IMG/VR virus record: IMGVR_UViG_3300033153_015063
Span: 62,001 to 126,000 of that record
DNA length: 64,000 nt
Reading direction: 5' to 3' (one strand)
The notes beneath the pieces are model-generated. The model was not told the DNA's origin and ran no database searches. It worked only from the letters and a program-made list of their open reading frames with translations. The translations under genes and the position numbers were made by a program. Shown piece by piece: positions 34,196 through 59,415 of the stretch (the stretch's first letter is position 1; each line of letters starts with the position of its first letter).

Positions 34196-34271
34196 TTACG
34201 CTTTTTACAGTTAACCCAGCCCAAACTATATAAAGACCAAGATGCGGGTAAGAGTTAGGTGATGTATGATG
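34196..34271 (+). promoter_or_regulatory. motif + TATA + UTR + RBS unit, copy 1 of 3
   Basis: 45-bp TATATAAAGACCAAGATGCGGGTAAGAGTTAGGTGATGTATGATG at 34227-34271. Confidence 0.9.
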
Positions 34272-35021
34272 GTTACAAAAGTAAAAATCGGAACGACCTT
34301 TCGCTCTGGACTTGCCGATGGAAACCCTCTCTGGAAGATTATCAAGAAAGTAGGATCTCGGCCGGCGACCTATCTCTGCGATGTCGTGAACGAACCCGTT
34401 GAGTTCAACGGAAAGATGTTTGATAGTGACTTCGCTGGCCACTCAGATACCTTCCTCAAGTCAGCAATCGAGCAGAAGCTCAGGTTCTCCGATGCTATCA
34501 ACCATCTGGTGGCCGAAAAAGAATCATTCTGGGACAGCCAGAAAGTTGGAACCACCTACCACTACCAGAGCTCCCGGGGCCAGTGGATTCGGGGAGTGGT
34601 TGATACCCGTGAGGACGACAAAGGTAGGACTGAGAAGTTCCTGAAGTGGACCAACCTTATCGGAGATTGGCGACATGAACTTCCTCAGGTCCGTGCTGAT
34701 GGTTCAGTCTACAAGGGTTACTATATTGAGAACATCGAGAAGGGAGATGGGAACTGTCCAAGTGAATCCCAACTCTATGAGTGTAACTCCGCCAAGTTCT
34801 CTGACAACCCTACCCAGATGGAACCTATCGACCTGACCATCCCCGAACCATCCGAGGATGAAAAGAAGGAACAAGAGCTCTGGCAGAAGGTCAACAAGGT
34901 CCGGGATCTCTTACAGTCCACCAACGAATCCATCAAGTCTGATGGAAAATCCCCCGAACATCTTCTCGATGAAATCAGGGGCGTCGTGGGTCAAGGTTAC
35001 AGACGCCTCTTCAATTTCTGA
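34266..35021 (+). CDS. phage-type hypothetical protein
   Basis: 251-aa ORF with strong promoter and RBS. Confidence 0.8.
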   Translation: MMVTKVKIGTTFRSGLADGNPLWKIIKKVGSRPATYLCDVVNEPVEFNGKMFDSDFAGHSDTFLKSAIEQKLRFSDAINHLVAEKESFWDSQKVGTTYHYQSSRGQWIRGVVDTREDDKGRTEKFLKWTNLIGDWRHELPQVRADGSVYKGYYIENIEKGDGNCPSESQLYECNSAKFSDNPTQMEPIDLTIPEPSEDEKKEQELWQKVNKVRDLLQSTNESIKSDGKSPEHLLDEIRGVVGQGYRRLFNF

Positions 35022-35269
35022 TGACAGTCCAATATATCATAGGTGATAAGGTGGACCCATCAAAAGAAGAAAAACTGGTCCAGGCGATGTTGGCCCAGAT
35101 GCGTCGGGATACCGTAAGGATATTCGGTAGGATTCTCGGTATCCCGACGCATCAAACCATAACACCACAACCAATCCAGGAGCCTCAACCGGCCCCGGTG
35201 GTTCCAACGTCCCAGGTTGTCACTAAAACCCCGAAAAAACGGGTGAATCGTAGGCTTTTCGATTTCTGA
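35021..35269 (+). CDS. small protein ending RRLFDF
   Basis: TGATG coupling; C-terminus echoes RRLFNF of the upstream gene. Confidence 0.7.
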   Translation: MTVQYIIGDKVDPSKEEKLVQAMLAQMRRDTVRIFGRILGIPTHQTITPQPIQEPQPAPVVPTSQVVTKTPKKRVNRRLFDF

Positions 35270-35343
35270 CCCATCCACCCAACCATTCTCTCCTGTTTTC
35301 TAGAAAACACTTCCGGGGTGATGGGTGATGTTACGAGGATGGT

Positions 35344-36255
35344 TTACGAATCTGATTGTCTGGCCCAGACGACCCAGCCCTGGGCCCTCTTCTGCATCCT
35401 GACAAAGTAACCGGCCTCCCTCCATGCATCCCGGATTGCATCTCCACCACTCCGTTCTTTCATAATGGCGATGACACGGTACTCCTTACCGTCGAACATC
35501 CTTTTGGAATTGATACCAGACTTCTTTGCCTTTGCCTTTGCCTTTTTGGCCTGACGGGCAGTCTTCAGGTTCCGCTTCGCCGCCCGTATCTGTTTCTTTG
35601 ACCTTGGAAGCTTGTGAGCCTCTTTGATGTTCTTCTTTGCCTGCTTCACCTGGGCCGATGTCGGGCGGTCAGAAATCTCGACGTCGATGGGGTCCCAACC
35701 CAGCTTCCCCCGGTACTTGTTGACCATACGGATGGCCTGCTGTTGCTTGGCCTTCGTGGCGAACTCACCCCTACCAGATTGTTTGATAGCGGCCCCGAGT
35801 GTCATGGTCCGTGATTGGAGGGTAGCCATGTTGATACCCTTCCGCCGGTCCTGGTCTATCTGTTCCAGAATCTTTTTCACTTCATCGGTGTGTGACAGAC
35901 CCTCTGGGTCGATGTCCTTTACCTGCCCCTTCGCACCGAGATAGATGGGTTTCCCTGACGCCATCTTTTTCCGTTCTGTGACCCGCTTTTTTGCTCTTCC
36001 CCCACCCTCTGTGGTCTCTCCCGTCCTCTCCCATGAATCTACGTAAGTGGCACGTTCGTCTCGCTTTCGGACCCTGGCGAGTTCCTCCTGGGCTGGCTTG
36101 ATGCGTTCCTCCAGTATGTCCTGGAGAGATTCCATGAACTCAGCCTCCTTCAGTGCCGGGGCCTCTCCCACAGGCCCCTTGTACACAGTTTTACCATTTT
36201 CGTACTCGTACCTGTATCTGTTACCGGACCCTGGTGGAATCTCAACGGTGGTCAT
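35344..36255 (-). CDS. leader-module protein with very basic, possibly nucleic-acid-binding cargo
   Basis: MTTVEIPPGSGNRYRYEYENGKTVYKGPVG; cargo paralogous to gene 43144. Confidence 0.85.
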   Translation of the reverse strand: MTTVEIPPGSGNRYRYEYENGKTVYKGPVGEAPALKEAEFMESLQDILEERIKPAQEELARVRKRDERATYVDSWERTGETTEGGGRAKKRVTERKKMASGKPIYLGAKGQVKDIDPEGLSHTDEVKKILEQIDQDRRKGINMATLQSRTMTLGAAIKQSGRGEFATKAKQQQAIRMVNKYRGKLGWDPIDVEISDRPTSAQVKQAKKNIKEAHKLPRSKKQIRAAKRNLKTARQAKKAKAKAKKSGINSKRMFDGKEYRVIAIMKERSGGDAIRDAWREAGYFVRMQKRAQGWVVWARQSDS

Positions 36256-36416
36256 CGGCTATGGATGAGCTGAGGAGTATTTAAAAGGTTCTCTTTTGAA
36301 GGGATTTACATCCTGTTCAATCTCAAACTATAGGGATGTACATCAAAACTATATAGATACTTACACTTATTTCACATAAAATAAGTTAAAAAGTGATTTA
36401 CTTTTATATCTTGCCT

Positions 36417-36529
36417 CCATAAAAGGGAGTATTTAACCATAGGGGGAAAAAAGATACCCCCCTGTACCATGCTGTAATGAAGCCATCTGCAGTATATAAA
36501 GACTATAGAGATTGAGGCTGGAAATATAT
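36417..36529 (+). repeat. 113-bp inverted repeat, left copy
   Basis: exact reverse complement of 51888-52000. Confidence 0.9.
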
Positions 36530-36953
36530 GTATGACTACAAAATCTCTATATAGATTCAAAAGAGATTTATACACGACTGATATAAAACTACATCGTCTG
36601 TCAACGTATTAGAAACAGATACGTTGAGAAGGTAAACTACTTATATTAGTTGTACAAATACACACAACTACCAATTTCGTCCTGGTGCGGAGTCCTCATC
36701 TCTCCGCACCCACTTTTTTCCCTCTACTCCCATCATCCCCATATACCCCCCTAACCAAAAAGGGGCCCTAATACCCTATATATAATATAGGACCAATAAT
36801 AATAATAATAATAAAAATAGACCCCAAGCTACCATTGAGCTGCTTTCGCTCAGTTTCTTTCAGGCTGCTTTCATATATAAACCCCACGACGCCACATCCA
36901 TCTTACGAACCAAAAACCTTTTAAAACCATAGGCCTTTAAACCCAACGATAGA

Positions 36954-38123
36954 GTGACACACCTGAAGGAGATTCCGAAGGGCAGCGGAAACCTTTACAT
37001 CTACGGTTATAACTCAGGAAAGAAGAGTGATGAATACATAGGGGTCTACTCCAGGGAAAAATGGGTTGAGTTAGCCCTGATGGAGAAGCTACAGAAGAGT
37101 GTCCAGGAACTCAGAGAAATCGAAGGTAGTCGTAGTGAAGATGAACGGGAGGAGGATGAAAGTGAGTTGAACAATGACCTCATCTACCCAGACGACCCAC
37201 GTATCAGAGAGTGGCTCATCGACCCATCCAAACTCGACGTAGTCGGTGTAGACCTCGATCTCAAATCGGTCCGAGATGAAATAATAAGACTCAAAAAGGA
37301 TAGTAAAAGTCTCGAAAGGGAAATAGGTGAGATGGAAAAAATTGGTGTTGAGAAAGAACGTTACGAAAATCTACTCTGGCGTAAAAAGGCAAAGGACCTG
37401 GAATTGAGACAAGCCATTTTCATCGAAAAATTCCCAAACACTACATCTTTCATAGTTTTCAATCCAGAACATATGAAGAACGTCATAAACGGAAAATACA
37501 ACTATGTCCTTCAAATAGGAAAAGAAGTTGATGGTTTTTCTGACCTTGGGATTCCACCACGACACATCTACGACATAGGTATCAACTACTTCAATGGTTC
37601 TCAGGAGAATTATGGGGCAGCTGGATCGTATCAGAGAAAAAATGAACATCACTTGCATGGTCAGTTGACCATACCTTACTATAAAAACAAACGAAAAAAG
37701 GGTCCAACTGAAGATGATAAACATACCATAATCCATGAAGTGGGTCATCACGTCCATACATCTACACTCCTTGGTCACAAAAAATTAAAAAAGTATTACA
37801 CCAAGTGGAACGAAGAGATGCATAAAATATCACTGACAATGCCACCAGCCGGAACCATGTCCAGGGTCCAGGCATATGGGAGTGACCCGCACGAAACGTT
37901 CGCCGAGAGATACGCAACCTATATCGACGGTAAGATGATAACAAATAAACAGATATTAAATAAACAAGTTACAACACTAAAAAGTAAAACTAAATTAACT
38001 AAAAAAGAGAAGAAAGAGATAGAGATATTGGAGGATGAGATAACCGCATCTAAAACGATACTAGATTTTTTCTCTGAAACGTTTAAAGCTATCGAACAAG
38101 TAGACCTCAACAGGAGAGAATGA
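36954..38123 (+). CDS. divergent leader fused to a zincin-like metallopeptidase
   Basis: EIPKGSGNLYIY; IIHEVGHHVH followed by ETFAE. Confidence 0.8.
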   Translation: MTHLKEIPKGSGNLYIYGYNSGKKSDEYIGVYSREKWVELALMEKLQKSVQELREIEGSRSEDEREEDESELNNDLIYPDDPRIREWLIDPSKLDVVGVDLDLKSVRDEIIRLKKDSKSLEREIGEMEKIGVEKERYENLLWRKKAKDLELRQAIFIEKFPNTTSFIVFNPEHMKNVINGKYNYVLQIGKEVDGFSDLGIPPRHIYDIGINYFNGSQENYGAAGSYQRKNEHHLHGQLTIPYYKNKRKKGPTEDDKHTIIHEVGHHVHTSTLLGHKKLKKYYTKWNEEMHKISLTMPPAGTMSRVQAYGSDPHETFAERYATYIDGKMITNKQILNKQVTTLKSKTKLTKKEKKEIEILEDEITASKTILDFFSETFKAIEQVDLNRRE

Positions 38124-39076: not shown

Positions 39077-39080
39077 GAAA

Positions 39081-39689: not shown

Positions 39690-39712
39690 TCACACACGTA
39701 CGATGCATACTC

Positions 39713-40321: not shown

Positions 40322-40374
40322 TGTATGGGGAAGGAATTAGACATATATAAAGGTTGAAGGTTGAGGTTCCGCTT

Positions 40375-40408: not shown

Positions 40409-40443
40409 AAACTTCTTAAAGTCACTCTGGTGTTGGTTGGATA

Positions 40444-41968: not shown

Positions 41969-42044
41969 AGGCGGGTAGCGGATTCGAACCGCTGTGGTCT
42001 CTACAGGTGATGTATGATATGAGACACACCTCCATCGACCCACC
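41969..42044 (-). ncRNA. 76-nt tRNA-like RNA lacking a D-stem, with an anti-RBS loop
   Basis: acceptor GGTGGGT/ACCCGCC; stem GTCTC/GAGAC around loop ATATCATACATCACCTGTA; T arm AGCGG-TTCGAAT-CCGCT. Confidence 0.7.
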
Positions 42045-43143: not shown

Positions 43144-43641
43144 CTACTTCCCCTTCCTGATGGCTACAGAGAGTGGTTTCCAACCATGACCATCTCTCCA
43201 TTTATTGATTACCACAATGGCTTTTTTCTTCTGTTCATTCGTCATCTTCGAGGTCTGTTCCACAATACCCTTCAATCTCATCGAACGTGCATGTATGGTG
43301 CCCCTGTTAACACCTTCATCCATGTCCTCGTCGAGTTCGATGAGTATGTTTTTGACCTCACGAACATCCGAAAGACCCTTCGGGGCAAAATCTCTGACCT
43401 GCCCAGGTCTACCGAGATAGACATTCTCACCACCTGGTACTACAATCCTCTTCCCTTCGACGTATGTGACACGCCTATCCCTTTCTCTAACACCCACCAC
43501 CTTCATAATCTCCAGGAACTCCCCCTCGTCCAGGGCTGGTGCTTCTCCTACAGGCCCCTTGTACTGAGTTTGTTGTGTGGCCTGGTCATAGACATACCTG
43601 TATTTATTCCCTGAACCTGGAGGGATTTCAACTATGGACAT
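43144..43641 (-). CDS. leader-module protein
   Basis: MSIVEIPPGSGNKYRYVYDQATQQTQYKGPVG. Confidence 0.85.
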   Translation of the reverse strand: MSIVEIPPGSGNKYRYVYDQATQQTQYKGPVGEAPALDEGEFLEIMKVVGVRERDRRVTYVEGKRIVVPGGENVYLGRPGQVRDFAPKGLSDVREVKNILIELDEDMDEGVNRGTIHARSMRLKGIVEQTSKMTNEQKKKAIVVINKWRDGHGWKPLSVAIRKGK

Positions 43642-43702
43642 TACAGACACCTAGGATGATTATGGATGAGCTGAGGAGTATATAAATGTCCCGTTAACTT
43701 AT

Positions 43703-44612: not shown

Positions 44613-45112
44613 CGTAACCAGGAAGATGGCTCAGGATTTTCCCACTTATCCTTAACCTTCTCTACCAATTCATCATCTCTTTTCTGGACCAACTCAGATA
44701 CCTTCATCCCTTTCTCGGTCAGTCCGCCCCAATATTCAGCGTAAGAATATTCTTTAAACATAGTTCTGATTTTCCCTCCAGTTAATCTCCACTCCATCAG
44801 ACCTTTTCGTTCCATTACCTTATAGGTGACCATTGGATAAAGGATGTGTTGTCCTCTACTTATATGGAAGTTAGTGTCTGAATCTACATCCCACCCTTTT
44901 CTCCCAAACAGTATAAGAACTTCCTTCTGTGTAGGGGAAAGTTCTTTGTAGATTTCTTCGATTTCTTTATTCTCAGTACCCATCCCCTTCAAGAACTCAG
45001 CCTCTCCCAGCTCAGGAGAATCCCCGACCGGCCCCTTGTACTGTGTCTTGCCGCCTTCATATTCGTAGCGGTATCTATTCCCTGAGCCTGGTGGAATCTC
45101 TACAGTGGTCAT
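44609..45112 (-). CDS. leader-module protein, possible winged-helix cargo
   Basis: MTTVEIPPGSGNRYRYEYEGGKTQYKGPVG; LSPTQKEVL...LTEKG. Confidence 0.85.
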   Translation of the reverse strand: MTTVEIPPGSGNRYRYEYEGGKTQYKGPVGDSPELGEAEFLKGMGTENKEIEEIYKELSPTQKEVLILFGRKGWDVDSDTNFHISRGQHILYPMVTYKVMERKGLMEWRLTGGKIRTMFKEYSYAEYWGGLTEKGMKVSELVQKRDDELVEKVKDKWENPEPSSWLR

Positions 45113-45651: not shown

Positions 45652-46224
45652 CTACTCCTCGGCCTCGAAATCCTCTTCCTCAAGGTCAGCAAGTCGATCC
45701 TCTATCTCCTCTAATCTATTGTCAATAGCATTATCCTCTTTTTTCAGTTGCAGGACCTTTCTTTTCAGGTCTGTGACATGCGTCCTATTCTCAGCAGCAT
45801 TGTCACTCACAGATTCTATTTCAAATTCTATGATGCTGAATGCTTTGTTCTGTTCGTTGTCGATGACTATAATAGCGTCGACAACGTTCTCTATCTTCTC
45901 CTGGTCGGTTTGGGTTTCCTCTATGTCGTCTTCTATCTCTTCGAGTTGATTGACGACCCGGCCGGCAGCATCTTTGAAACCCCCTACACCCTCCAATACT
46001 TTCGGCCTCGGTGGATCAAAATCTCTCCAGTCATCGACCCACTCCACAAAATCTCCGACCCCGACAACTACATCATCGTCAATTCCCATCATCTCCAGGA
46101 ACTCCTCCTCATCCAGGGCTGGTGCATTGCCGACCGGCCCCTTGTAGACCGTAGCCTTGGTCTCAGCATCATAGACGTATTTGTATCTGTTACCGCTTCC
46201 AGGAGGGATTTCGACTATGGACAT
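45652..46224 (-). CDS. leader-module protein with acidic coiled-coil cargo
   Basis: MSIVEIPPGSGNRYKYVYDAETKATVYKGPVG. Confidence 0.85.
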   Translation of the reverse strand: MSIVEIPPGSGNRYKYVYDAETKATVYKGPVGNAPALDEEEFLEMMGIDDDVVVGVGDFVEWVDDWRDFDPPRPKVLEGVGGFKDAAGRVVNQLEEIEDDIEETQTDQEKIENVVDAIIVIDNEQNKAFSIIEFEIESVSDNAAENRTHVTDLKRKVLQLKKEDNAIDNRLEEIEDRLADLEEEDFEAEE

Positions 46225-46280: not shown

Positions 46281-46688
46281 CTAAAACTCCACTTGAAGCT
46301 CGTTGTAATAGTCCCGAGGGCTTTTCGGGGAACGGCCGGCAATCAAATCACTGTTGAATAAATCGACCATATCACCGATAGTATCAGCAGCCCTATTTAA
46401 ATAATCTTCACAATCTGTATCACAATCTATAGGTAAATCTAACTGTTTTAACTGTTCAGATGTTATATAGTCATTGATATATGCATTATCGTCCTCTGCA
46501 AATTGTGAAAAGAAATATGTTAATCCAGACATCTGATAATGGTTCACCGTATTCCTGAACATCTCCAGGAACTCCCCCTCGCTCATCTCAGGAGAATCCC
46601 CGACCGGCCCCTTGTAGACCGTAGCTCCCTCTTCATATTCATAGCGGTATCTGTTACCTGAGCCAGGAGGGATCTCGACAATGGTCAT
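46281..46688 (-). CDS. leader-module protein with AT-rich cargo
   Basis: MTIVEIPPGSGNRYRYEYEEGATVYKGPVG. Confidence 0.85.
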   Translation of the reverse strand: MTIVEIPPGSGNRYRYEYEEGATVYKGPVGDSPEMSEGEFLEMFRNTVNHYQMSGLTYFFSQFAEDDNAYINDYITSEQLKQLDLPIDCDTDCEDYLNRAADTIGDMVDLFNSDLIAGRSPKSPRDYYNELQVEF

Positions 46689-50530: not shown

Positions 50531-50883
50531 TTTACGCTTTTTACAGTTGAACAATCGTAAGACCGTTGTTGTCACAATCGGTCCTATTTCAATAGTTTAA
50601 TATTCTCTGAAGTAGTTGACGCTATCAAGAACGTTGGTGGGAGTATCAGACTGTAACCCTATGATATGTCCAGGGTTTCCAAAACCACACCCGCTACTTT
50701 TCCACCATGGCCGTCAAGCTACCCCAGGCCATCCTTTCCTGGTGGGTTTACCCGGATACGATTGTTAGATATAAACTGTCTCTTATAAAAATGTATCTTG
50801 TTTGCATCAAACGTATTGGTGAGATGTTTATAAAGGAACTGTAAAATATCAGGCATCTTATAAAAGTCCTGTACCATCACGTG

Positions 50884-51042
50884 AGAGCTTTATATACTCA
50901 CAAGTAGGCCAGAGCTTTATATACTCACAAGTAGGCCAGAGCTTTATATACTCACAAGTAGGCCAGAGCTTTATATACTCACAAGTAGGCCAGAGCTTAT
51001 ATACTCACAAGTAGGCCAGAGCTTTATATACTCACAAGTAGG
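50884..51042 (+). repeat. 6 x 27-bp tandem repeat AGAGCTTTATATACTCACAAGTAGGCC
   Basis: units start at 50884, 50911, 50938, 50965, 50992 (one T missing) and 51018 (partial). Confidence 0.95.
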
Positions 51043-51083
51043 TTACGTTCTTTACGGTATTGGCCTAAGATACGTTTCTAATG

Positions 51084-51800
51084 TGTAGTAGTAGTGTAGT
51101 AGTAGTAGGTAGTAGTGTAGTAGTAGTAGGTAGTAGTGTAGTAGTAGTAGGTAGTAGTGTAGTAGTAGTGTAGTAGTGTAGTAGTAGTAGGGTAGGTAGT
51201 AGTGGAATTAAATGTGAAGCACTGTGGATGGGGTAGGTAAGATAGGTAGGTAACGGAATTAAATGTGAGACAGTAGATGCCGTAATAATAGTAATAGTAG
51301 TAATAACTGTAACAGGAAAATTAAATGTTATCAGTCAGTACACAGTTGTTTGGCACTATGGTAACCAAATTAAATGAAATCAGTTCACTCTCAAAAGCGT
51401 AATTTTTGAAATTCTACCATCCCGTACACACGTGTATGGCAAGGAGATAGTTAGTAAGTAGTAGTAGTGGTAGTAGATAGGGTAGATAGGGTAGTAGAAT
51501 TAAATGAAATATGGTAGGTAGTAGTAGGTAGTAGTAGGTAGTAGTAGGTAGTAGTAGTAGGTAGTAGTAGGTAGGTAGGTGGTAGGGTCAGAATTAAATG
51601 AAATAGGGTAGTAGGGGGTAGTAGTAGGGTAGTAGGGGGTAGTAGTAGGTCAGAATTAAATGAAATAGGGTAGTAGGGGGTAGTAGTAGGGTAGTAGGGG
51701 GTAGTAGTAGGGTAGTAGGGGGTAGTAGTAGATAAGGTAGGTAGGGTAGGTGGGTCAGAATTAAATGAAAGTAGGTATGATGTATCAGTAGTGGTAGTAG
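51084..51800 (+). repeat. GTA/GGTA low-complexity tract with 8 AATTAAATG boxes; candidate origin or terminal region
   Basis: + strand is G-rich and C-poor; no ORFs. Confidence 0.8.
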
Positions 51801-51887: not shown

Positions 51888-52000
51888 ATATATTTCCAGC
51901 CTCAATCTCTATAGTCTTTATATACTGCAGATGGCTTCATTACAGCATGGTACAGGGGGGTATCTTTTTTCCCCCTATGGTTAAATACTCCCTTTTATGG
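51888..52000 (-). repeat. 113-bp inverted repeat, right copy
   Basis: exact reverse complement of 36417-36529. Confidence 0.9.
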
Positions 52001-52134: not shown

Positions 52135-52389
52135 TTATTCTACGATCTTTCTGGGGTTACCATCATCCCCAAGTGTATATCTGTTACCAGATCCATAAGG
52201 AAATTCAATCACCCCGGTGTTTTTCTTGCGATGGATCTTACATTTTGGGCACCACGAGAGTTTTCCTGCATCCCTCAACTTGGTGTCACACTCGGGGCAC
52301 CAACCCTGGATTAGTTCCAATGCACCTTTCAAAGCAGTCATACTGACTTCTCTGCCCACTCTTTTTGTCCTCCTATACTTTGGACCCAT
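52135..52389 (-). CDS. zinc-ribbon protein with a leader-like motif at the C-terminus
   Basis: CPEC...CPKCKIH followed by VIEFPYGSGNRY. Confidence 0.7.
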   Translation of the reverse strand: MGPKYRRTKRVGREVSMTALKGALELIQGWCPECDTKLRDAGKLSWCPKCKIHRKKNTGVIEFPYGSGNRYTLGDDGNPRKIVE

Positions 52390-52434
52390 CCTTGTTCAGT
52401 TATCGCTTGTTTTTGCCTGTTTCCTGGTGGTTAT

Positions 52435-52695
52435 TCAATCCGTTCCGTTCTCCCCCAGAACCTGGATGGTATCTTCGATGGTTACACTGGCACTTCCGAT
52501 GAAGGAGTGGTCACTGCTCCGGGCCATCTGGAGTTGTGCATACCAGTAACAATACGCAGCCTCAAGGTCCCGGCCGTTCCCATTCTCTCGCAGTTCACTG
52601 TCGTTGATGACTACTTGGGCCAGATCAATGGCTTGTTCGATGAGCTCAGAGACCTCCTGTAGATTTTCGATTGCTTCGTTCTTGTCCATGTTCAT
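52435..52695 (-). CDS. hypothetical protein
   Basis: GGAGA RBS; operon context. Confidence 0.65.
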   Translation of the reverse strand: MNMDKNEAIENLQEVSELIEQAIDLAQVVINDSELRENGNGRDLEAAYCYWYAQLQMARSSDHSFIGSASVTIEDTIQVLGENGTD

Positions 52696-52712
52696 CTCTC
52701 CATAAGGTAATG

Positions 52713-53168
52713 TCAGTCATCTGGGCGTGGGCCTGGGCCTTCCCACCACCAATAGTACATCACACCATCATCTCCCTCTCGTTCATCTCGAAACCACTTC
52801 GTTCCACAAACAGGGCAATAGATCACACTCCTTATCTCGTGGGCTGATGCTACCGCACCAAGGCAACAAAGGTTATCGCCTCCAAATTGGGATTCTTCGA
52901 AGGTCTCACTATTGAGACAATGTTTACAGGTAACCTTTTTTACATCAATGGTGCAAAGAATGTCCTTTGGAGATACACCACAAGAGACAGTATTCTCACT
53001 TGTCCAATAGTGGACCATTGGTCCCTTCTGATTAACAGGTTTTGATGGGTCGTCACTTTCTTGTATTGCACTACCTTTGACATGGATCTTACATCTCCGG
53101 CACCAATACGCTTTACCTACCTCTTTTAGATTATCCCCACAATCGGGACAGACGTTAGTCATCCTCAT
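52713..53168 (-). CDS. multi-zinc-finger protein
   Basis: CPDC...CRRCKIH, TCKHC and CPVC. Confidence 0.7.
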   Translation of the reverse strand: MRMTNVCPDCGDNLKEVGKAYWCRRCKIHVKGSAIQESDDPSKPVNQKGPMVHYWTSENTVSCGVSPKDILCTIDVKKVTCKHCLNSETFEESQFGGDNLCCLGAVASAHEIRSVIYCPVCGTKWFRDEREGDDGVMYYWWWEGPGPRPDD

Positions 53169-53184
53169 CCTACCTTCTTACCTT

Positions 53185-54498
53185 TCAGATTGGGATGGTC
53201 CACGTCTTGGTCTTGGGTTTGTACTTCCCACCAACGGACTTGACAGCGGCCACAGCGTCAGAAAACACAGAACGTTCGAGGAAAGATCCATCGCCTATGG
53301 TAACTGATACGGACTTGGCGTTAACCCTCTTCAGCACAAGTTCTTCATGGACACCCTTTATTTTATCCTCGATGTCGGCCCTATCGGACACCCGATCTTT
53401 TTTCGCTTTGCGGGATACGGCAGCTTTGGCCTTTCGTTCCTCGGCCTTCCGGGCTGCCTCTTCTTTCATCTCTTTCTCCCGCTCAGCATCCCGGATCTCA
53501 CGTTTTGCCTTCCGTTCGGTCTCTTTCTCGGTCTTGATGACAACGGCCTTTTTCTGACGAACCTCGAAAGCGGCCTGGACCTCGGCCTCGACACCAAGGA
53601 GCTCGATGGAGTTCTTCAAACCAGAGCTTGATGGACTGTGGATTGGGCCCCACTCGGCCTGACGCATCTCATCCTCAGAGAGTTCTTTCGAAGTGAGCTT
53701 CACCTTCATGTTCTCGATGACCCGGTCGGCCAGGTCCTTGTCAGCCATGATGTCTTTGTACAGGGCGGAACCGTAGCAGTCGGAGTAGTCACATCCCTGG
53801 GCCCCATCGGACCGGTGATGAAAGATGGTCTCGATGAGATAACCCGATGGATCTTCTACCATCAAGTCGATGTCCTTCTGATTGATGCCAACCGCCCGGC
53901 CTGGTGTGGTGTAATAGTACACCCGCCAATCGTCGTAGGCATCGACGTTCATCTTCAGCGTATCAGAATCGGGGAACCACGTGGCTCTCTTCGTGGAGAT
54001 ACCACCATCCACGAAACCAATCTGTGTGCTCTCACCGTCCGTCGGGGCCCCGTTGACCTCCACCAGTCCCTTCTCGCTGATAAAGTCCTCGATGACCTTG
54101 TTGATCTTCTCCCGTTCGGCCTCGGCATCAGCTTCTTTCTGCTTTTTTTCCTCGACCTTCCGTATCCCTTCCGCCTTGGCTTTGACCCTGGCTTTGGCAT
54201 CATCATCCAATCGCCCTCGGGCCTCGTCGATGTCGGTCTGGAAGTTATCGAGAAGATACTGAACACTTTCATTGGTCGGGGCGAAGTAAGTATAGTTTTT
54301 ACCGTAGCTGGATCTCACGACGAAGGTGTTGGAGAGATTTTTTACCTTTGGGAGGGCGGCTGCCGGGACTGTATGAACGTCCCAGTGACTGTGCCAGAAA
54401 CAATCGTCGCAGTAGTCAGGGCAGTCCGAGAAGGAACCATCCTCGTCAACATGCACGGCCTCCACCCATGATTTCCGAACCACTTCTTCGTCGTTCAT
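53185..54498 (-). CDS. hypothetical protein with coiled coils
   Basis: GAGGTGA RBS; C-terminal GGKYKPKTKTWTIP motif. Confidence 0.8.
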   Translation of the reverse strand: MNDEEVVRKSWVEAVHVDEDGSFSDCPDYCDDCFWHSHWDVHTVPAAALPKVKNLSNTFVVRSSYGKNYTYFAPTNESVQYLLDNFQTDIDEARGRLDDDAKARVKAKAEGIRKVEEKKQKEADAEAEREKINKVIEDFISEKGLVEVNGAPTDGESTQIGFVDGGISTKRATWFPDSDTLKMNVDAYDDWRVYYYTTPGRAVGINQKDIDLMVEDPSGYLIETIFHHRSDGAQGCDYSDCYGSALYKDIMADKDLADRVIENMKVKLTSKELSEDEMRQAEWGPIHSPSSSGLKNSIELLGVEAEVQAAFEVRQKKAVVIKTEKETERKAKREIRDAEREKEMKEEAARKAEERKAKAAVSRKAKKDRVSDRADIEDKIKGVHEELVLKRVNAKSVSVTIGDGSFLERSVFSDAVAAVKSVGGKYKPKTKTWTIPI

Positions 54499-54509
54499 CG
54501 CTTCTCACC

Positions 54510-54650
54510 TCAGCTACTGAGAAAGTTCACGTCCCTTTCATGTTCTTCCCAGCAGGCAGTATGGATGCCGAATGTCACTTTCATACCCTTGGTAATGGGC
54601 AGGTCACAGTACTGGCAGGTAGCATCTTCACCTTTGTATATCACTTCCAT
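54510..54650 (-). CDS. 46-aa zinc-finger protein (MEVIYKGEDATCQYC...HTAC)
   Basis: fills an operon gap; CxxC...HxxC; below the track cutoff. Confidence 0.65.
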   Translation of the reverse strand: MEVIYKGEDATCQYCDLPITKGMKVTFGIHTACWEEHERDVNFLSS

Positions 54651-54662
54651 TGTTCTCACTTC

Positions 54663-55712
54663 CTAGATGATCGCCTGAGCGGTTGAATCGTTGCTGTCAG
54701 TGGTTTCGTGGGGCAAAGGATGGGCTTTCTGGACTTCGACGGTCTTTGCCTCATCCAGGACGAGTTCGAGAGCTCTCTGGACCCGGCCCATGACCTTGTA
54801 GATGGCTTTTCCCACCGAGAAGCCACCCTCCTTTGCGTAGTGCTGGATGTACTCGTAGGTGTTGCCGGTCGTGTCATCCTCCCCATCACCGAATACCTGG
54901 TAAAGCACCTGGGCACCGAGTTCAGCGGTCGCCTCCTGGTCCCAATGCTGCCCCGTCTTCAGGCTGCCCCGATTCTTCTCGTCGGCCTTGTGGACCAGTT
55001 CATGGAGGAAGGTCTTGGGATGGCCGGTCATAAGTTCGATGGTCTGTTTTGATGGACTGTAGGAACCGAGGGACTTCCCGTTGAACCCGTTGGCTTTGAC
55101 CCGCAGGCCCCATTTCTGGGCCACTTTGATGAGTGGAAGATCCTTTAGTTCGTTCCACTTCTCCTTTCTCCAGACATCCTCAGGGATGTCGTCCCCTTCG
55201 GTGTCTTCATAGCGGAAGGCCTTGAAGGTGCGGAACCTCATGTAGAAGATTTCTGCCTTGTACTCACCGTACTTGGCACCTGGGTCCCCATCAGACGCAG
55301 GATGGGTCTTTCCATCGGCGTCGGTGGTGTGCCACCCATTCTTCTTCGAGATGAACGAGTTGTTATCAGGACGGAGGAGGTAGATGGCTTTGGACCCCTT
55401 TTTCGGGTAGCGGTTGTAGTTGTCCCGCCACTGTGCGAAGGTCATGGACAGGTTGGTTCCCATGACCCACTCGATGACCTTGTTGCCCATCGACCTCTGG
55501 GGATGGAATCCGACGTCGGGTTGGTCGGCAAAGACCTCCATTGCTATGGACTCTGGGATGGTCTTCACCTTCTCGGGATCGGAGAAGAAATCAGTCAGGG
55601 TGTCGAGGACCTGGTTGACCTCCTCCTCCTTCTTGGCCTTCCACTCGGCCCGTTCTTCTGGACTCGGGTTCCACTTCTTTCTGCCGCCTTTGGATGGTTT
55701 CCGTCGTGCCAT
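54663..55712 (-). CDS. ArdC-like anti-restriction protein (ssDNA-binding N-domain plus HExxH domain)
   Basis: TFAQW...KKGSKAIYL; FLHELVH; EATAELGA; YIQHY. Confidence 0.75.
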   Translation of the reverse strand: MARRKPSKGGRKKWNPSPEERAEWKAKKEEEVNQVLDTLTDFFSDPEKVKTIPESIAMEVFADQPDVGFHPQRSMGNKVIEWVMGTNLSMTFAQWRDNYNRYPKKGSKAIYLLRPDNNSFISKKNGWHTTDADGKTHPASDGDPGAKYGEYKAEIFYMRFRTFKAFRYEDTEGDDIPEDVWRKEKWNELKDLPLIKVAQKWGLRVKANGFNGKSLGSYSPSKQTIELMTGHPKTFLHELVHKADEKNRGSLKTGQHWDQEATAELGAQVLYQVFGDGEDDTTGNTYEYIQHYAKEGGFSVGKAIYKVMGRVQRALELVLDEAKTVEVQKAHPLPHETTDSNDSTAQAII

Positions 55713-55713
55713 C

Positions 55714-55899
55714 TTACTCACTCTCCATGAAGACATCAGGGATAGCCTCGATCATGTCCGTACCATCCTCATTCTGCAACCAGTCGATGGCATACCAAAG
55801 GATTTTCAGCTTCCTCCAGGTGTTCTTGTCATCCTTGTGGACGGTCTGTAGCCGGGCCCTGATTTCACGCTTCGTTTGTGTAAGATTTTTGGACATCAT
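55714..55899 (-). CDS. small protein, first gene of the ArdC-like operon
   Basis: directly after copy 2 of the 45-bp promoter/RBS unit. Confidence 0.75.
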   Translation of the reverse strand: MMSKNLTQTKREIRARLQTVHKDDKNTWRKLKILWYAIDWLQNEDGTDMIEAIPDVFMESE

Positions 55900-55969
55900 A
55901 CATCACCTAACTCTTACCCGCATCTTGGTCTTTATATACTTTCAGGCCAAACAACCGTAAAAAGCGTAA
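55894..55969 (-). promoter_or_regulatory. motif + TATA + UTR + RBS unit, copy 2 of 3
   Basis: 55894-55938 is identical to 34227-34271; motif at 55953-55969. Confidence 0.9.
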
Positions 55970-56260
55970 AAGAACATTTCGTACTCTCAAGGTGTGATGG
56001 GATTTGAAGAAATTTATGGTGGTAGGATTGAAAAAACGCAGGGCCCCGTATGCCATGACACCCAACCGTCGTTGGGTACTGGGACGACTCCCAGGAGATG
56101 CACGTGCGATTACCTCGACGGGACCCCGCCCACCCTCACACTTCGGTTCTCGTCAGTGGCTTTTGGCCACTTTATTCGATACACCTCCGAGGGTGGACCA
56201 CACAATCTATGATTGGTGGCAACGTAAGGTATTACAGGATGTGTTGATTAAGATTTCGGT

Positions 56261-56602
56261 CTATCTTTCATCCCCTGAACCGTGTAGCTTCTGGTCCGCT
56301 TTTCTCTTCGAGAGCTTCTGGACGTTCTTCTCCAATACATTGTTGAAGCTCAGGCCGAGGGTGTCACATATCCTGGCCAGATACCAACAGACGTCCCCGA
56401 TTTCTTTCTCTATAAGTGGCACATCGAGTTTTTCATCACGATACCACTTCTTGACCTTCTCGGCTATCTCTCCAGTCTCACCAGTGAGACCGAGTGTCAG
56501 ATACATGACCTCGACTATCTTCTCGTGTTTGGCCTGGTCGAGAGATGGGTAGACTACTGTGGTTTTCGTGAAAGCCTGGTATTCATCGGGGTCCATACCC
56601 AA
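56261..56602 (-). CDS. MazG-like nucleotide pyrophosphohydrolase
   Basis: LGLTGETGEIAEKVKK, KEIGDVCWY, N..KL..R...GSGDER. Confidence 0.85.
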   Translation of the reverse strand: MGMDPDEYQAFTKTTVVYPSLDQAKHEKIVEVMYLTLGLTGETGEIAEKVKKWYRDEKLDVPLIEKEIGDVCWYLARICDTLGLSFNNVLEKNVQKLSKRKADQKLHGSGDER

Positions 56603-56648
56603 CGACTACTGGAGAATGTTTTTAAACTATTCGTTCGTTGTCCGTCCG

Positions 56649-57644
56649 TCATCGACTCAGGAACCCTACTACATCGTTCCATCTGTCTCTCAGTTCTTCA
56701 AGGTTCTCAACGTGTTCATTCTCCTTTTTTACCTTCTCCTGCCACTTTTTTTCATCTCTGATAGCCTCGACCTCATCTCTGATAAGACCAACTATAATGC
56801 CAGGCCCCAGGGCATCAACCTCCCAACTCTCAGCACCATACTTGGAGATATAATCGACGGACCTGCTATCGGAAATCTTGGCTGGGTTGGGAGGTGGGCT
56901 GTGTTGTTGGACCTGGTCCCAGTTCAGTGCTATCCTCCTGACCTCAAGGAGATTGTTGGTATGAGTATCACTTGCACCTTCATAATCATCGAACCTCTCC
57001 ACCCAGTGATCCCAGGTTTCACGTTCCCATTTTCTATTGACATCACCTTCCAAAAAGATGGTCAACCTCTCAAAGATGTCTCTGGTCATGTCGATGCCCG
57101 ACGGATCGTGGTCCCCGAGATGGAGAAGGATAGGATACTTCCCACTATTAAGATAACCAAGAAAGCGTTGAGATGCCTCCCACATCGCACTCTGGCTTGA
57201 GTATCCTCTACATGAGAAGTACGGAACATCAAGGCTGGGGCAGATTGCCTCAAGGATGCCCACGAGGGCGTCTTTTTCAATCCACACCTCAACCATATAC
57301 TCCTGACCATCCCACTTGTTGATTTGGAAGGACTTGACTGCTGACCTGATGATGTCCACCGGGCTGTCCCAATGGTTGTTTTCCCGCACATAACGGGTCC
57401 TGTCAGTGATATGGTCCCAATCAATCAGCCCGGCTAGCCTGGCGTTGTTGATGACGGTCTTTATGCGGTTGTAGGATTTGTCATTGTTTTCTATCAGACC
57501 TTTGCTGACAAACTGGTAGTAGAGCTGTCTGATAGTCAGGTCAAAACCCTGTTGGACATGCTCGTCGATGATTGCTGTAGCCATCTCTATAAGAGATGTG
57601 CTATCCTTCTGAAATCTCTTCTTTACATACTCGATATTGGGCAT
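56649..57644 (-). CDS. winged-helix plus Toprim protein (Topo VI-A/Spo11/JetD-like architecture)
   Basis: TIRQLYY; VWIEKDAL; GYSS; LHLGDHDPSG; WEVDAL. Confidence 0.75.
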   Translation of the reverse strand: MPNIEYVKKRFQKDSTSLIEMATAIIDEHVQQGFDLTIRQLYYQFVSKGLIENNDKSYNRIKTVINNARLAGLIDWDHITDRTRYVRENNHWDSPVDIIRSAVKSFQINKWDGQEYMVEVWIEKDALVGILEAICPSLDVPYFSCRGYSSQSAMWEASQRFLGYLNSGKYPILLHLGDHDPSGIDMTRDIFERLTIFLEGDVNRKWERETWDHWVERFDDYEGASDTHTNNLLEVRRIALNWDQVQQHSPPPNPAKISDSRSVDYISKYGAESWEVDALGPGIIVGLIRDEVEAIRDEKKWQEKVKKENEHVENLEELRDRWNDVVGFLSR

Positions 57645-57727
57645 CTCAAGTCCTCAGTATGAAAGAAAATGAAAAAGAGAGTTAATAAAGAGAGTCCCTG
57701 GGAAAGGAGTAAAAACCAGTCGGAGAT

Positions 57728-58045
57728 TCATAGTCTGGTTTTTCTGATACTTCGTAGGAAATCCAGACTTTTCCGTGTCAATCGAAAAACTTCCATCTCC
57801 ATCTCTATCAGATACCCATCTACGATAAGTTTTTCGAGGGTAGTAGAGTGGAAGGTTTGACCTTCGGGACGCCAACATTTTTCCCCAAACTCCCACATAA
57901 GTTGTTGGCGGTCAACATCCAACATATAATCTCCAGATAATATATTGTCGATGTGTATTAGATTGATACGATAGATAACGTCGTATAGGATTTTTTCATC
58001 TATATTATCGGATTCAAAAGAATCCAGACTTTCACTTCCTTCCAT
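57728..58045 (-). CDS. small protein, possible winged helix
   Basis: TLEKLIVDGYL...FRLTRKS. Confidence 0.6.
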   Translation of the reverse strand: MEGSESLDSFESDNIDEKILYDVIYRINLIHIDNILSGDYMLDVDRQQLMWEFGEKCWRPEGQTFHSTTLEKLIVDGYLIEMEMEVFRLTRKSLDFLRSIRKTRL

Positions 58046-59345
58046 TTTTCAGGACCTTCACGTAGTTGACAATGGTCTCCTTATTTCCGTTGTAGCTGTT
58101 CTGCTTCTTGACCTTGGCAGAGATGGTAACGATTGTTCCTTCCTGGATGTTGTCCCGATTCTCATTGGCGAACCACTTGACGGATCGACCAGTGGGGTTA
58201 TCATCGTCATCGACCTCGTCCATGATATGAAGCGTCCAGGCACCATACCCACTCTGGCCCGACCTGTGTGCCTTGACATGGACCCGCACACTGACCTTAT
58301 CACCTTCTTTTCCGAGGAATCCATTGGCTGTGTTGGTGGGTGTCTTCGAGGCAAGGCTCTGGGCGTTCTCACGGGTGTAGGCGGAAACGATGCTGGCCAC
58401 GATACCGAGAGACCTCCGGGTGAGGGCGATGGATTTTGAAGCCGCATTCATGTTCCTTTCGTAGTCCGACATGGGTTTCAGGGCCCGGCGGGCCCAGTCA
58501 AGGGCATCGGCAGCGAGTTTCTGGTCGGCGTCGGTGGGATTCCACCGTTTCCATTCACTCTTGGTCATGGTCTCGGGGGGGTCGAAAAGGCGGAGTGCGA
58601 TATTGGCCGTTGAGTGGACACCATCCTCCTCTGCCTTCCATTTCGGCATCCAGCCGCCGATACGGATGCAGACAGCGACAGCGGTCAGATAGTCTTTGGT
58701 GTCAATCTCCCAGTAATCGTGGCTATACTCACCCATGTCATCAATGGACCGCATGACCACGTTGATGGTCTTCTGATAGTTGGCGAGGGTCTTGGGGTCG
58801 ATGCCACCGAGATAATCTCGGACGCACTTCGATCCAACCTGCTTGTAGACGCCGGTGTCCTCTTCGAGAACCACGTAGGTGATCTTCCGGGCGGATCTAC
58901 CTGCCTTCTTGGTCCCACAGTGGTCACACATAAACCGACCCCGGAACGTCTCGGGGATGACCTCGCCAGGCACAGAGTAGAACACCTCGGTACCCTTTTT
59001 ATCCTCGGTCTTGAGTTTCTCGATGGACCCGATGAGCTGGAACCCCTCGATATGGGGTGCCTCACCGGTTATTCGAACAATGGCCCACTGGCAGAGTTCT
59101 GCGTAATAATTGCTGGGCTTTCCGTTCACCCTGATGGGACACACCTGGTCCTTGGCCTTTCCCCTGAAGTCCTTTTCCGTCCACTTTTCGATGAGTGTCA
59201 TGGTGGGCTCAGGGAATCCGTACTTCAGGGCCTTCTTTGCCTGCTGCCCGATTTTCTTCTCCAGGGTCTCCAGATTATACTGGGGGATGAGGAAGAGTTC
59301 AGGGTCCTTCCCAACAAGTGTTTCGGCGGTTTCATAATCCATCAT
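58032..59345 (-). CDS. phage-type protein with a zinc motif and a C-terminal OB-fold-like region
   Basis: CDHC...QVGSKCVRDYLG; ISAKVKKQNSYNGNKETIV. Confidence 0.8.
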   Translation of the reverse strand: MMDYETAETLVGKDPELFLIPQYNLETLEKKIGQQAKKALKYGFPEPTMTLIEKWTEKDFRGKAKDQVCPIRVNGKPSNYYAELCQWAIVRITGEAPHIEGFQLIGSIEKLKTEDKKGTEVFYSVPGEVIPETFRGRFMCDHCGTKKAGRSARKITYVVLEEDTGVYKQVGSKCVRDYLGGIDPKTLANYQKTINVVMRSIDDMGEYSHDYWEIDTKDYLTAVAVCIRIGGWMPKWKAEEDGVHSTANIALRLFDPPETMTKSEWKRWNPTDADQKLAADALDWARRALKPMSDYERNMNAASKSIALTRRSLGIVASIVSAYTRENAQSLASKTPTNTANGFLGKEGDKVSVRVHVKAHRSGQSGYGAWTLHIMDEVDDDDNPTGRSVKWFANENRDNIQEGTIVTISAKVKKQNSYNGNKETIVNYVKVLKNGRK

Positions 59346-59415
59346 ACATCACCTAACTCTTACCCGCATCTTGGTCTTTATATAGTTTTGGCTGGGTTAA
59401 CTGTAAAAAGCGTAA
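59340..59415 (-). promoter_or_regulatory. motif + TATA + UTR + RBS unit, copy 3 of 3
   Basis: one mismatch to 34196-34271. Confidence 0.9.

What the first reader, a model, noticed from the sequence alone, without database searches (positions are those of the whole stretch)
34196..59415. Identical 45-bp promoter/UTR/RBS unit in front of three unrelated genes
Seen: TATA through two ATG codons is identical at 34227-34271(+), 55894-55938(-) and 59340-59384(-), while the downstream ORFs are unrelated. Inference: a second portable expression cassette. The two direct copies could excise the 3.4-kb MazG/Toprim/OB block. Shared targeting by the antisense loop could maintain the identity.
Basis: partly seen in the sequence, partly recalled or inferred. 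Interest (0 to 1): 0.65.

Follow-up and report, generated by a model that had tools for sequence, protein, structure and literature searches.

The report
Repeated promoter-leader cassettes in jumbo virus
The identical 45-base unit is real and is one sub-family of about 26 to 33 promoter-plus-leader cassettes spread through a 242.6-kb virus genome that reads like an archaeal virus, so it is a virus-wide regulatory module that is copied and recombined, not a special three-copy device.

Summary
The 45-mer is exact at 34227-34271(+), 55894-55938(-) and 59340-59384(-), with 0 of 100 shuffles matching. There is a fourth exact copy and two near copies outside the window.

The window lies in a 242,596-bp IMG/VR virus record. 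The unit is the 3' part of an ~80-nt cassette: tandem TTTACG box, 18 nt, GAAAS + TATATAAAG, leader, AGGTGAT, ATGATG. Twenty-six cassettes share exactly this register (0 in a reversed control). Each has an ORF start downstream in its orientation.

Genome-wide geometry fits archaeal BRE/TATA promoters:
- Genes without a Shine-Dalgarno (SD) site start about 30-33 nt after a TATA-like box.
- Internal operon genes carry SD sites.
- Two tRNA genes have short anticodon-arm introns.

The predicted mRNA therefore starts at the A of AGGTGAT. This is inferred; no RNA data exist.

Spacer types and leader types occur in mixed combinations, which points to exchange at the conserved cores. The closest analogues are PeSL cassettes of T4-type phages and the HGTV-1 motif, but these units have no stem-loop.

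Excision of the 3.4-kb block is plausible but untestable here: no runs were listed and no relatives were found. Nothing supports an antisense loop.

The parts
34196..34212 (+). Upstream box of cassette A (TTACGCTTTTTACAGTT; two TTTACG-like half-sites 9 nt apart)
   Evidence: The box is near-invariant in 26 cassettes and always lies 18 nt before TATATA (26 real, 0 in the reversed control).
34222..34235 (+). BRE-like purine run plus TATA box (CAAAC + TATATAAAG) of cassette A
   Evidence: information content is maximal over GAAAnTATATAAAG.
34257..34271 (+). Predicted transcript start (A at 34257), SD AGGTGAT (34257-34263) and ATGATG start (34266-34271) of cassette A
   Evidence: The transcription start site (TSS) is inferred from the TATA-to-start geometry. 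The string AGGTGATGTATGATG occurs in 6 genes of the genome.
34266..35021 (+). Gene driven by cassette A, 251 aa, no family match
55953..55969 (-). Upstream box of cassette B
55894..55943 (-). BRE/TATA (TATA 55931-55938), leader, SD (55902-55908) and ATGATG (55894-55899) of cassette B. Its spacer type differs from A and C and is shared with the copy at genome 240356.
   Evidence: 72 nt 100% identical to genome 240322-240393.
52135..55899 (-). Genes downstream of cassette B: 61 aa, 357 aa, 46 aa, 437 aa, 151 aa (zinc-ribbon-like) and 84 aa; all of unknown function
59399..59415 (-). Upstream box of cassette C
59340..59389 (-). BRE/TATA (TATA 59377-59384), leader, SD (59348-59354) and ATGATG (59340-59345) of cassette C
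   Evidence: (I15).
56261..59345 (-). The 3.4-kb block between direct copies B and C: 437 aa (phrog_2319, weak OB match, distant match to a gene annotated RecT-like), 105 aa, 331 aa (phrog_6247, annotated 'DNA topoisomerase') and 113 aa MazG
15758..15802 (+). Related unit: the same upstream box with a TTATATAC-type TATA and a leaderless start about 30 nt later. A second such unit lies at 17690-17734.
   Evidence: (D16).
1353..1424 (-). Another box + TATA + AGGTGATG cassette in the window (variant TATATAAT)

Best explanation
The 45-mer is the downstream two-thirds of an ~80-nt transcription/translation-initiation cassette. A 242.6-kb virus uses this cassette at least 26 times.

Anatomy (shown):
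- A near-invariant upstream box, TTTTACGC-TTTTTACRG, made of two TTTACG half-sites 9 nt apart.
- Exactly 18 nt from the 13-nt box core TTACGCTTTTTAC to the TATA; its last five bases are the conserved GAAAS.
- GAAAS followed by TATATAAAG.
- A leader of about 22 nt.
- AGGTGAT.
- ATG(ATG).

Mechanism (inferred):
- GAAAS + TATATAAA is an archaeal-type BRE/TATA element read by the host's TBP/TFB and RNA polymerase.
- Transcription starts about 23 nt after the TATA box, at the T|A step in front of AGGTGAT (window 34257, 55908, 59354).
- This gives a 9-nt leader that is essentially just the Shine-Dalgarno site, followed by AUGAUG.
- The upstream box is most likely the site of a viral or host transcription factor that defines this promoter class as a temporal or regulatory group. 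With its two T-runs it may also stop transcripts arriving from the gene upstream.

Why the copies are identical (inferred from mosaicism):
- Cassettes are duplicated and recombine with each other at their conserved cores, the box and the TATA.
- One leader therefore ends up in front of unrelated genes, and spacer and leader types are reshuffled.
- This is the same process proposed for PeSL cassettes of T4-type phages.
- The two direct copies 3,446 bp apart could by the same route delete or circularise the 437-aa/Toprim-like/MazG block. That is not shown.
For: Repeat and family:
- Exact copies.
- 26 units with the box, an 18-nt spacer and TATAWA, against 0 in the reversed control.
- An ORF start follows each unit, in its orientation, within about 65 nt of the TATA.
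- Downstream proteins are unrelated.

Mosaic structure:
- The 'ACCAAGATGCGGG' leader occurs with two different spacers.
- The 'GCTGATTGTTAG' leader occurs with three spacers.
- Spacer 'GGTTGATTTCCC' occurs with two unrelated leaders.
- Spacer 'GGTTCAAAACCA' occurs with two unrelated leaders.
- The copies at genome 15032 and 240356 share their upstream flank but differ in spacer. Window copies A and C share that spacer with other flanks, so all four flank-by-spacer combinations exist.

Archaeal-type reading:
- Starts 28-35 nt after TATATA[AC] have SD energies like random sequence (median -2.7 vs -3.2 kcal/mol). Starts at 38-48 nt have strong SD (median -9.8).
- Among 118 SD-less genes, TATA-like hexamers peak sharply at -31 to -28 from the start codon.
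- 46 sequence-distinct upstream regions carry a CTTTTTAAAC-like box about 22 nt before ATG.
- That motif has 97 hits vs 22 in the control, and 38 of 60 ORF-linked hits start 30-33 nt downstream.
- Internal operon genes have SD tetramers peaked at -12 to -9, and 24 gene pairs overlap by 4 nt.
- tRNA-Met has a 92-nt intron at the canonical anticodon-loop position with a bulge/4-bp helix/bulge fold. A second tRNA has about 25 extra nt in the anticodon arm.
- The virus encodes no splicing endonuclease or RtcB.
- PolB and an RFC-like clamp loader match haloarchaeal tailed viruses and archaeal structures best.
- No sigma-70 region 2, T7-type RNA polymerase or Rpb2 domain was found.
Against: - No transcript data exist, so the TSS, promoter activity and factor binding are all inferred.
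- TTTACR, 17 nt, TATATA also fits a bacterial sigma-70 spacing. The rigid box-to-TATA distance is what a sigma factor would impose.
- A few units have an SD too close to the TATA for a start at position ~31: genome 162219 (AGGTGATG at positions 22-29), genome 9635, and genome 128301 (GGAGGT at 17-22).
- Several genes look bacterial or phage-like: a class II CCA-adding enzyme, Ro60/TROVE, 5-hmdU DNA kinase, a Toprim-like protein 47% identical to Brevundimonas phage genes, and GyrB 43% identical to a Parcubacteria MAG.
- No PCNA, PriS, Rad51/RadA or Hjc domain was detected.
- Many cassettes are homologous, so the geometry counts are not all independent, although the 46 distinct leaderless regions are.
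- Mosaicism shows past exchange, not ongoing mobility.
Confidence: 0.65

Rival explanations
1. The cassettes are bacterial sigma-70-type early promoters: -35 TTTACR, 17-nt spacer, -10 TATATA, and a start about 7 nt downstream giving a ~27-nt leader. This would be a true PeSL-like system of a jumbo bacteriophage.
For: - The 17-nt spacing is exact in 26 of 26 units.
- T4 early promoters also use GTTTAC-type -35 boxes (own knowledge).
- SD-like stretches (TAAGAG, GGAGGT) lie between the TATA and the ATG in some units.
- Several genes have bacterial or phage affinities.
Against: - The -10 candidate lacks the near-invariant T at -7, and the simple sigma-70 scan does not call these sites.
- No sigma factor or phage RNA polymerase was detected.
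- The fixed 30-33-nt TATA-to-ATG distance in dozens of unrelated SD-less genes would require uniform ~17-nt SD-less leaders.
- Short tRNA introns need an archaeal or eukaryal splicing endonuclease.
- No murein hydrolase of the SLT or T4-lysozyme type was found.
Confidence: 0.15
2. The leader identity is kept by selection on a shared regulatory target, not by recent copying. Candidates are a translational operator, a nuclease site or a small-RNA target in the 5' UTR. This includes the reader's antisense idea.
For: - The translation-initiation string AGGTGATGTATGATG is shared across two different leader families (6 genes). GGTGATGTATG occurs in 10 genes, including two without a class-1 promoter.
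- GTAAGAG is conserved at a fixed place in several leader types.
Against: - Other cassettes of the same class work with wholly different leaders, or with none, so the leader sequence is not required.
- Identity also covers the stretch that would not be transcribed between the TATA and the predicted start.
- No complementary element was found elsewhere and there is no stable structure.
- Sharp homology breakpoints at the start codon and at the conserved cores look like recombination junctions.
Confidence: 0.15
3. The repeats, or the order of the blocks between them, are assembly artefacts of a short-read metagenome assembly.
For: - The repeats of 45-88 nt are in the range of assembler k-mers.
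- The contig's own ends lie in a repeated paralogue module, which shows that repeats did affect this assembly.
Against: - Each copy has unique flanks on both sides that continue open reading frames in the right orientation.
- The family has graded divergence (80-100%), which chimeric joins do not produce.
- 26 units keep an exact register.
Confidence: 0.03

Closest known systems
PeSL (promoter-early stem-loop) cassettes of T4-type phages (Arbiol et al. 2010, PMC2839356; Comeau et al. 2014, PMC4122927)
   Same: - Short repeated intergenic cassettes, about 50 per genome, running from the promoter through the SD to the start codon of the downstream gene.
- Placed before genes that are mostly of unknown function.
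- Proposed to mediate modular shuffling by recombination between copies.
   Different: - PeSLs have sigma-70 -35/-10 promoters and a stable stem-loop terminator. Here no stable hairpin exists.
- The promoter geometry here fits archaeal BRE/TATA.
- An extra tandem TTTACG box sits at a rigid distance.
- No experimental or comparative evidence of exchange is available for this virus.
Conserved upstream motif of haloarchaeal myovirus HGTV-1 (Sencilo et al. 2013, as summarised in PMC3950731)
   Same: An archaeal tailed virus with a large genome in which many ORFs are preceded by a conserved motif containing a TATA-box-like region. It has been compared explicitly with PeSLs and proposed to act in transcription and genome shuffling.
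   Different: - The HGTV-1 motif includes an inverted repeat and is concentrated in one genome arm.
- Here there is no inverted repeat, the units are dispersed, sub-families are identical through the SD and start codon, and the proteome is not halophilic (median pI 5.9).
- The primary paper could not be read.
Archaeal basal promoters with leaderless first genes and SD on internal genes (Sulfolobus-type organisation; own knowledge)
   Same: - BRE + 8-bp TATA about 23 nt before the start.
- Leaderless first cistrons.
- GGTGA-type SD on internal cistrons.
- All three features are seen genome-wide here.
   Different: The cassette in question is the minority type, with a short SD-bearing leader and an additional conserved upstream box.

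Membership tests
PeSL cassettes (T4-type phages) | Strong sigma-70-like -35/-10 early promoter | tested here: inconclusive
   TTTACR, 17 nt, TATATA is present in all units. However, -7 is A rather than T, the consensus scan does not call the sites, and the genome-wide TATA-to-start geometry favours archaeal promoters.
PeSL cassettes (T4-type phages) | Stable stem-loop acting as terminator within the motif | tested here: not met
   Folds of six units with flanks gave z-scores from -0.09 to +1.76 against shuffles. No conserved hairpin was seen.
PeSL cassettes (T4-type phages) | The motif ends with the SD and start codon of the downstream gene | tested here: met
   Identity runs through AGGTGAT and ATGATG and stops there.
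PeSL cassettes (T4-type phages) | Tens of intergenic copies, mostly before genes of unknown function | tested here: met
   There are 26 strict copies, and the box alone occurs 44 times against 11 in the reversed control. Most first genes downstream have no Pfam or PHROG match.
PeSL cassettes (T4-type phages) | Recombination between copies producing indels between relatives and mini-circles | not testable with these tools
   No sequencing run was listed and no close relative was found. Only indirect support exists, from the intragenomic mosaic of flanks, spacers and leaders.
Archaeal BRE/TATA promoter | 8-bp A/T-rich TATA box with a purine-rich BRE directly upstream | tested here: met
   GAAAS + TATATAAA is invariant or nearly so in 26 units.
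Archaeal BRE/TATA promoter | Transcription starts about 22-27 nt after the TATA box at a pyrimidine-purine step | not testable with these tools
   No RNA data exist. Indirect support: SD-less genes start 30-33 nt after the first base of the box, and SD-bearing ones have T|AGGTG at that place.
Archaeal BRE/TATA promoter | The host is an archaeon | tested here: inconclusive
   For: short tRNA introns, leaderless/SD organisation, and PolB/RFC affinities. Against: class II CCA-adding enzyme, Ro60, and phage-like accessory genes. No host link is available.
HGTV-1-type conserved upstream motif | TATA-like region combined with an inverted repeat | tested here: not met
   The TATA-like region is present, but there is no inverted repeat or stable fold.

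The most novel reading that the evidence does not exclude
This would be one of the largest archaeal virus genomes yet seen (242.6 kb). Its early or regulated genes are organised by a dedicated class of BRE/TATA cassettes with a tandem TTTACG operator. The cassettes move and recombine within the genome, acting as an archaeal counterpart of PeSL-driven modular shuffling. That would include excision of cassette-bounded modules such as the 3.4-kb recombinase-like/Toprim-like/MazG block.
Probability: 0.4. Interest if true: 0.7.

Novelty: new variant of a known kind. Interest (0 to 1): 0.5.

Why it matters
Repeated regulatory cassettes are one of the few proposed mechanisms for how very large viral genomes gain, lose and rewire accessory genes. 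So far they have been shown experimentally only in T4-type phages.

If this virus infects an archaeon, it offers a clean, sequence-defined example with archaeal promoter logic:
- Three promoter flavours.
- Leaderless and 9-nt-leader designs side by side.
- A candidate operator at a rigid distance from the TATA box.

It also sits in a genome size class that is barely documented for archaeal viruses; a 228-kb candidate was reported only in a 2025 preprint.

The cassette gives ready-made, testable promoter and translation-initiation parts, and concrete junctions to look for in reads.

Tried and rejected
Searches that found nothing useful:
- Reads for a 55894/59340 junction or circles: the look-up of sequencing runs listed none.
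- Relatives in IMG/VR via the box 17-mer gave only single chance hits. The 437-aa protein gave none.
- The full box + 18N + TATATAAA pattern in metagenome contigs gave three identical AT-rich chance hits, one from a human-gut metagenome assembly. I read only ~120 nt around each match and did not pursue them.
- A word search with the RFC-like protein found only itself.
- A paralogue query found three large IMG/VR contigs. They share only a 66-aa domain, have at best a 28%-identical PolB, and carry no cassettes.
- The genome search 'relatives' is not available for a virus record.
- Sencilo et al. 2013 is not held.

Ideas rejected:
- A phage-encoded RNA polymerase or sigma factor as reader of the motif. 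None was found.
- A halophilic host, despite halovirus-like PolB and RFC. The proteome is not acidic.
- A stem-loop terminator inside the units.
- A separate antisense partner of the leader.
- A eukaryotic giant-virus reading. SD sites on internal genes, 4-nt gene overlaps and the lack of an Rpb2 domain argue against it.

Domain searches that were blank and left host assignment unhelped: PCNA, PriS, Rad51, Hjc, SLT and T4 lysozyme.

Rfam found nothing in the window.
Full report
**1. The observation**

No dinucleotide shuffle of the window produced a single match.

Identity ends right after ATGATG. The proteins that follow (251, 61 and 437 aa) are unrelated by blastp. None shares a family with another: only the 437-aa one matches a PHROG (phrog_2319), and the other two match nothing.

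The window is bases 62,001-126,000 of a 242,596-bp IMG/VR virus record (JGI contig Ga0366824_1000500). The whole record holds three more copies:
- a fourth exact copy at genome 14988-15032(-);
- a copy at genome 240322-240393(+), identical to the 55.9-kb copy over 72 nt but with a different last 7 nt before its ATG;
- a more diverged copy at genome 18732-18810(-), 82-85% identical to the other copies over ~80 nt.

**2. The unit belongs to a genome-wide family**

Upstream of each 45-mer lies TTACGCTTTTTACRGTT. Scanning the genome for this box shows a family:
- 26 units have the box core TTACGCTTTTTAC, exactly 18 nt, then TATATAAAG, against 0 in a reversed-sequence control.
- Several more have variant spacing or a TTATATAC-type TATA.
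- An ORF start follows each unit, in its orientation, within about 65 nt of the TATA.

The consensus is CTTTTACGCTTTTTACGGTT, a variable stretch ending in CTGAAA, one variable base, then TATATAAAG, then nCnGA. The box contains two TTTACG half-sites 9 nt apart.

Others are also repeated exactly, for example GCTGATTGTTAGTAAGAGG in five units.

**3. The pieces are shuffled**

Spacer types and leader types occur in mixed combinations:
- The leader of the finding sits behind spacer AGTTAACCCAGCC in copies A, C and genome 15032, and behind GGTTGTTTGGCC in copy B and genome 240356.
- Spacer GGTTGATTTCCC precedes two unrelated leaders, and so does GGTTCAAAACCA.
- Leader GCTGATTGTTAG follows three different spacers.
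- The copies at genome 15032 and 240356 share their upstream flank, including a divergent paralogue gene, but differ in spacer. Window copies A and C share the first spacer with other flanks.

Because the alternative segments are unrelated sequences, these patterns imply breakpoints inside the conserved box and the conserved TATA core. Cassettes have exchanged parts. This is inference from one genome, not an observed event.

**4. Which machinery reads it**

Two readings fit the local sequence. One is a bacterial sigma-70 promoter (-35 TTTACR, 17 nt, -10 TATATA). The other is an archaeal BRE/TATA element (GAAAS + TATATAAA). The genome as a whole decides for the second, on five lines of evidence.

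(a) Start distance and SD strength are linked.
- Genes whose start lies 28-35 nt after TATATA[AC] have anti-SD pairing energies like random sequence (median -2.7 vs -3.2 kcal/mol).
- Genes whose start lies 38-48 nt away have strong SD (median -9.8).

(b) TATA-like boxes sit at a fixed distance from SD-less starts.
- Among 118 SD-less genes with an upstream gap, TATA-like hexamers peak sharply at -31 to -28 from the start codon.
- 46 sequence-distinct upstream regions carry a box of the type CTCTTTTTAAACTC, CTTTATAAAC or CTTTAAATAC about 22 nt before an ATG.
- A simple regex for that box gives 97 hits against 22 in the control. Of 60 ORF-linked hits, 38 start 30-33 nt downstream.

(c) Internal genes of operons carry SD tetramers peaked at -12 to -9, and 24 gene pairs overlap by 4 nt. 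Leaderless first genes behind a TATA box at about -27, with GGTGA-type SD on internal genes, is the classical archaeal pattern (own knowledge).

(d) Two tRNA genes carry short insertions.
- tRNA-Met at genome 165517-165683 has a 92-nt insertion directly after the anticodon. Its fold places a 3-nt bulge, a 4-bp helix and a bulge at the exon borders.
- A second tRNA (genome 176182-176278) has about 25 extra nt in the anticodon arm.
- Such short introns are not group I introns. The virus encodes no splicing endonuclease or RtcB.

(e) Replication proteins point the same way.
- PolB and an RFC-like clamp loader match haloarchaeal tailed viruses best in the phage collection.
- They match archaeal proteins best among solved structures, although RB69 polymerase is close behind.
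- No sigma-70 region 2, T7-type polymerase or Rpb2 domain was found.

Evidence against an archaeal host:
- The virus has a class II CCA-adding enzyme, a Ro60/TROVE protein, a 5-hmdU DNA kinase, a Toprim-like protein 47% identical to Brevundimonas phage genes, and a GyrB 43% identical to a Parcubacteria MAG.
- A few TATATAC units have an SD too close to the TATA.
- PCNA, PriS, Rad51 and Hjc domains were not detected.

I put the archaeal reading at about 0.8 for the genome and somewhat lower for the detailed TSS prediction.

**5. Predicted working of the cassette**

Numbering the first T of TATATAAA as 1:
- The TATA box spans positions 1-8.
- A start about 23 nt after the box falls on the T30|A31 step, that is, the A of AGGTGAT (window 34257, 55908, 59354).
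- The mRNA would begin with the SD itself and reach AUGAUG after 9 nt.

In cassettes of the same class without an SD, the ATG sits at positions 29-33, so those transcripts are leaderless. Two different leader families place T|AGGTG at the same position. tRNA-Leu starts 3 nt after the equivalent point.

The upstream box then lies at about -61 to -45. Its invariance, tandem half-sites and rigid distance suggest a transcription-factor site that sets this promoter class apart from the more numerous CTTTTTAAAC-type promoters. It is retained in divergent intergenic regions, where it cannot terminate anything. A terminator role for its T-runs is therefore at most secondary. All of this paragraph is inference.

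**6. Comparison with known systems**

PeSLs of T4-type phages:
- They are repeated cassettes running from an early promoter through the SD to the start codon, about 50 per genome, mostly before ORFans.
- They mediate modular shuffling and form mini-circles between nearby copies (PMC2839356; PMC4122927).
- The present units share the layout, copy number, placement and signs of exchange.
- They lack the defining stem-loop, and their promoter is probably not sigma-70-type.

HGTV-1: the haloarchaeal virus HGTV-1 has a conserved TATA-like motif with an inverted repeat before many ORFs, already likened to PeSLs (PMC3950731). Here no inverted repeat exists.

I therefore file this as a new variant of a known kind, not as a PeSL member.

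**7. The excision idea**

Copies B and C are direct repeats 3,446 bp apart that share 45-49 nt of perfect identity plus the box. Between them lies one transcription unit:
- a 437-aa protein (phrog_2319), with a distant match to a gene annotated as a RecT-like annealing protein in a Tunturiibacter phage;
- a 105-aa protein;
- a 331-aa Toprim-like protein (phrog_6247);
- MazG.

Recombination would delete or circularise this unit and leave one hybrid cassette. This is plausible by analogy. It could not be tested: no runs were listed and no close relative exists in the collections searched.

**8. Verdict**

The 'portable expression cassette' reading is broadly right but too narrow. Excision is open. 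The antisense idea has no support.

The main added value is twofold: the cassette is one of three promoter flavours of what is most likely a jumbo archaeal virus, and its parts have been reshuffled at conserved cores.

Noticed in passing
window 23763-23881, 24549-24686, 33958-34081(-), 36120-36255(-), 43530-43642(-), 44987-45112(-), 46090-46224(-), 46557-46688(-), 60537-60674(-), 61010-61133, 61808-61936, 62541-62653; about 40 copies genome-wide: A large paralogue family shares a conserved ~125-nt 5' module (proteins begin MTTVEIPPGSGNRYRY ... TVYKGPVG) in front of divergent C-terminal parts. One member hits PF18905 (DUF5661). Most members sit behind leaderless TATATAC- or TTTAAAT-type promoters.
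   Followed up: partly
window 36417-36529 and 51888-52000: A perfect 113-nt inverted repeat flanks 15.4 kb. Each arm carries a TATATAAAG box pointing inward. This could allow inversion of the segment.
   Followed up: no
window 50857-51044 and 51075-51800: About six tandem copies of a 27-nt unit, each containing TTTATATAC, followed by long GTAGTAG-rich arrays with strong G over C skew. Their function is unknown; they could be an origin or a non-coding RNA region.
   Followed up: no
whole genome; examples in window at gene starts 36255(-), 40321(-), 41880(-), 44363(-): The commonest promoter type is CTCTTTTTAAACTC-like, about 22 nt before an ATG without an SD. There are 46 distinct cases, implying leaderless transcripts.
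   Followed up: yes
genome 165517-165683(-), 176182-176278(-), 175560-176420(-) (outside the window; L028, L029): tRNA genes with short anticodon-arm introns lie in a cluster with repeated GGAGTGCTGTAGA motifs and extra T-arm-like pieces, just upstream of a Ro60/TROVE gene (L029:7573-9225). These may be Y-RNA-like or split tRNA elements.
   Followed up: partly
window 41969-42044(-): A tRNA-like T-arm sequence (GCGGTTCGAATCCGC on the minus strand). It was flagged only by low-threshold ARAGORN as an intron-bearing tRNA and was not called by Rfam.
   Followed up: no
genome 1-64, 215158-215221, 242533-242596: The 64-nt 'direct terminal repeat' of the record lies inside the repeated paralogue 5' module, and 114 nt at the right end equal genome 215108-215221. 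The ends may reflect assembly at a repeat rather than true termini.
   Followed up: partly
L030:7177-8241(-), L031:14190-16049(-), window 56261-56602(-): A 5-hmdU DNA kinase, a long thymidylate-synthase-like protein and MazG suggest hypermodified thymidine in the virion DNA.
   Followed up: no
window 29337-32729(+): A 1,130-aa protein with about 15 thrombospondin type-3-like 36-aa repeats (108-nt DNA period). Neighbouring genes carry PKD and fibronectin type III domains and are probably virion surface or adhesion proteins.
   Followed up: no
L023:13445-15223(-): A 592-aa protein with a Cas12f1/TnpB-like TNB domain.
   Followed up: no
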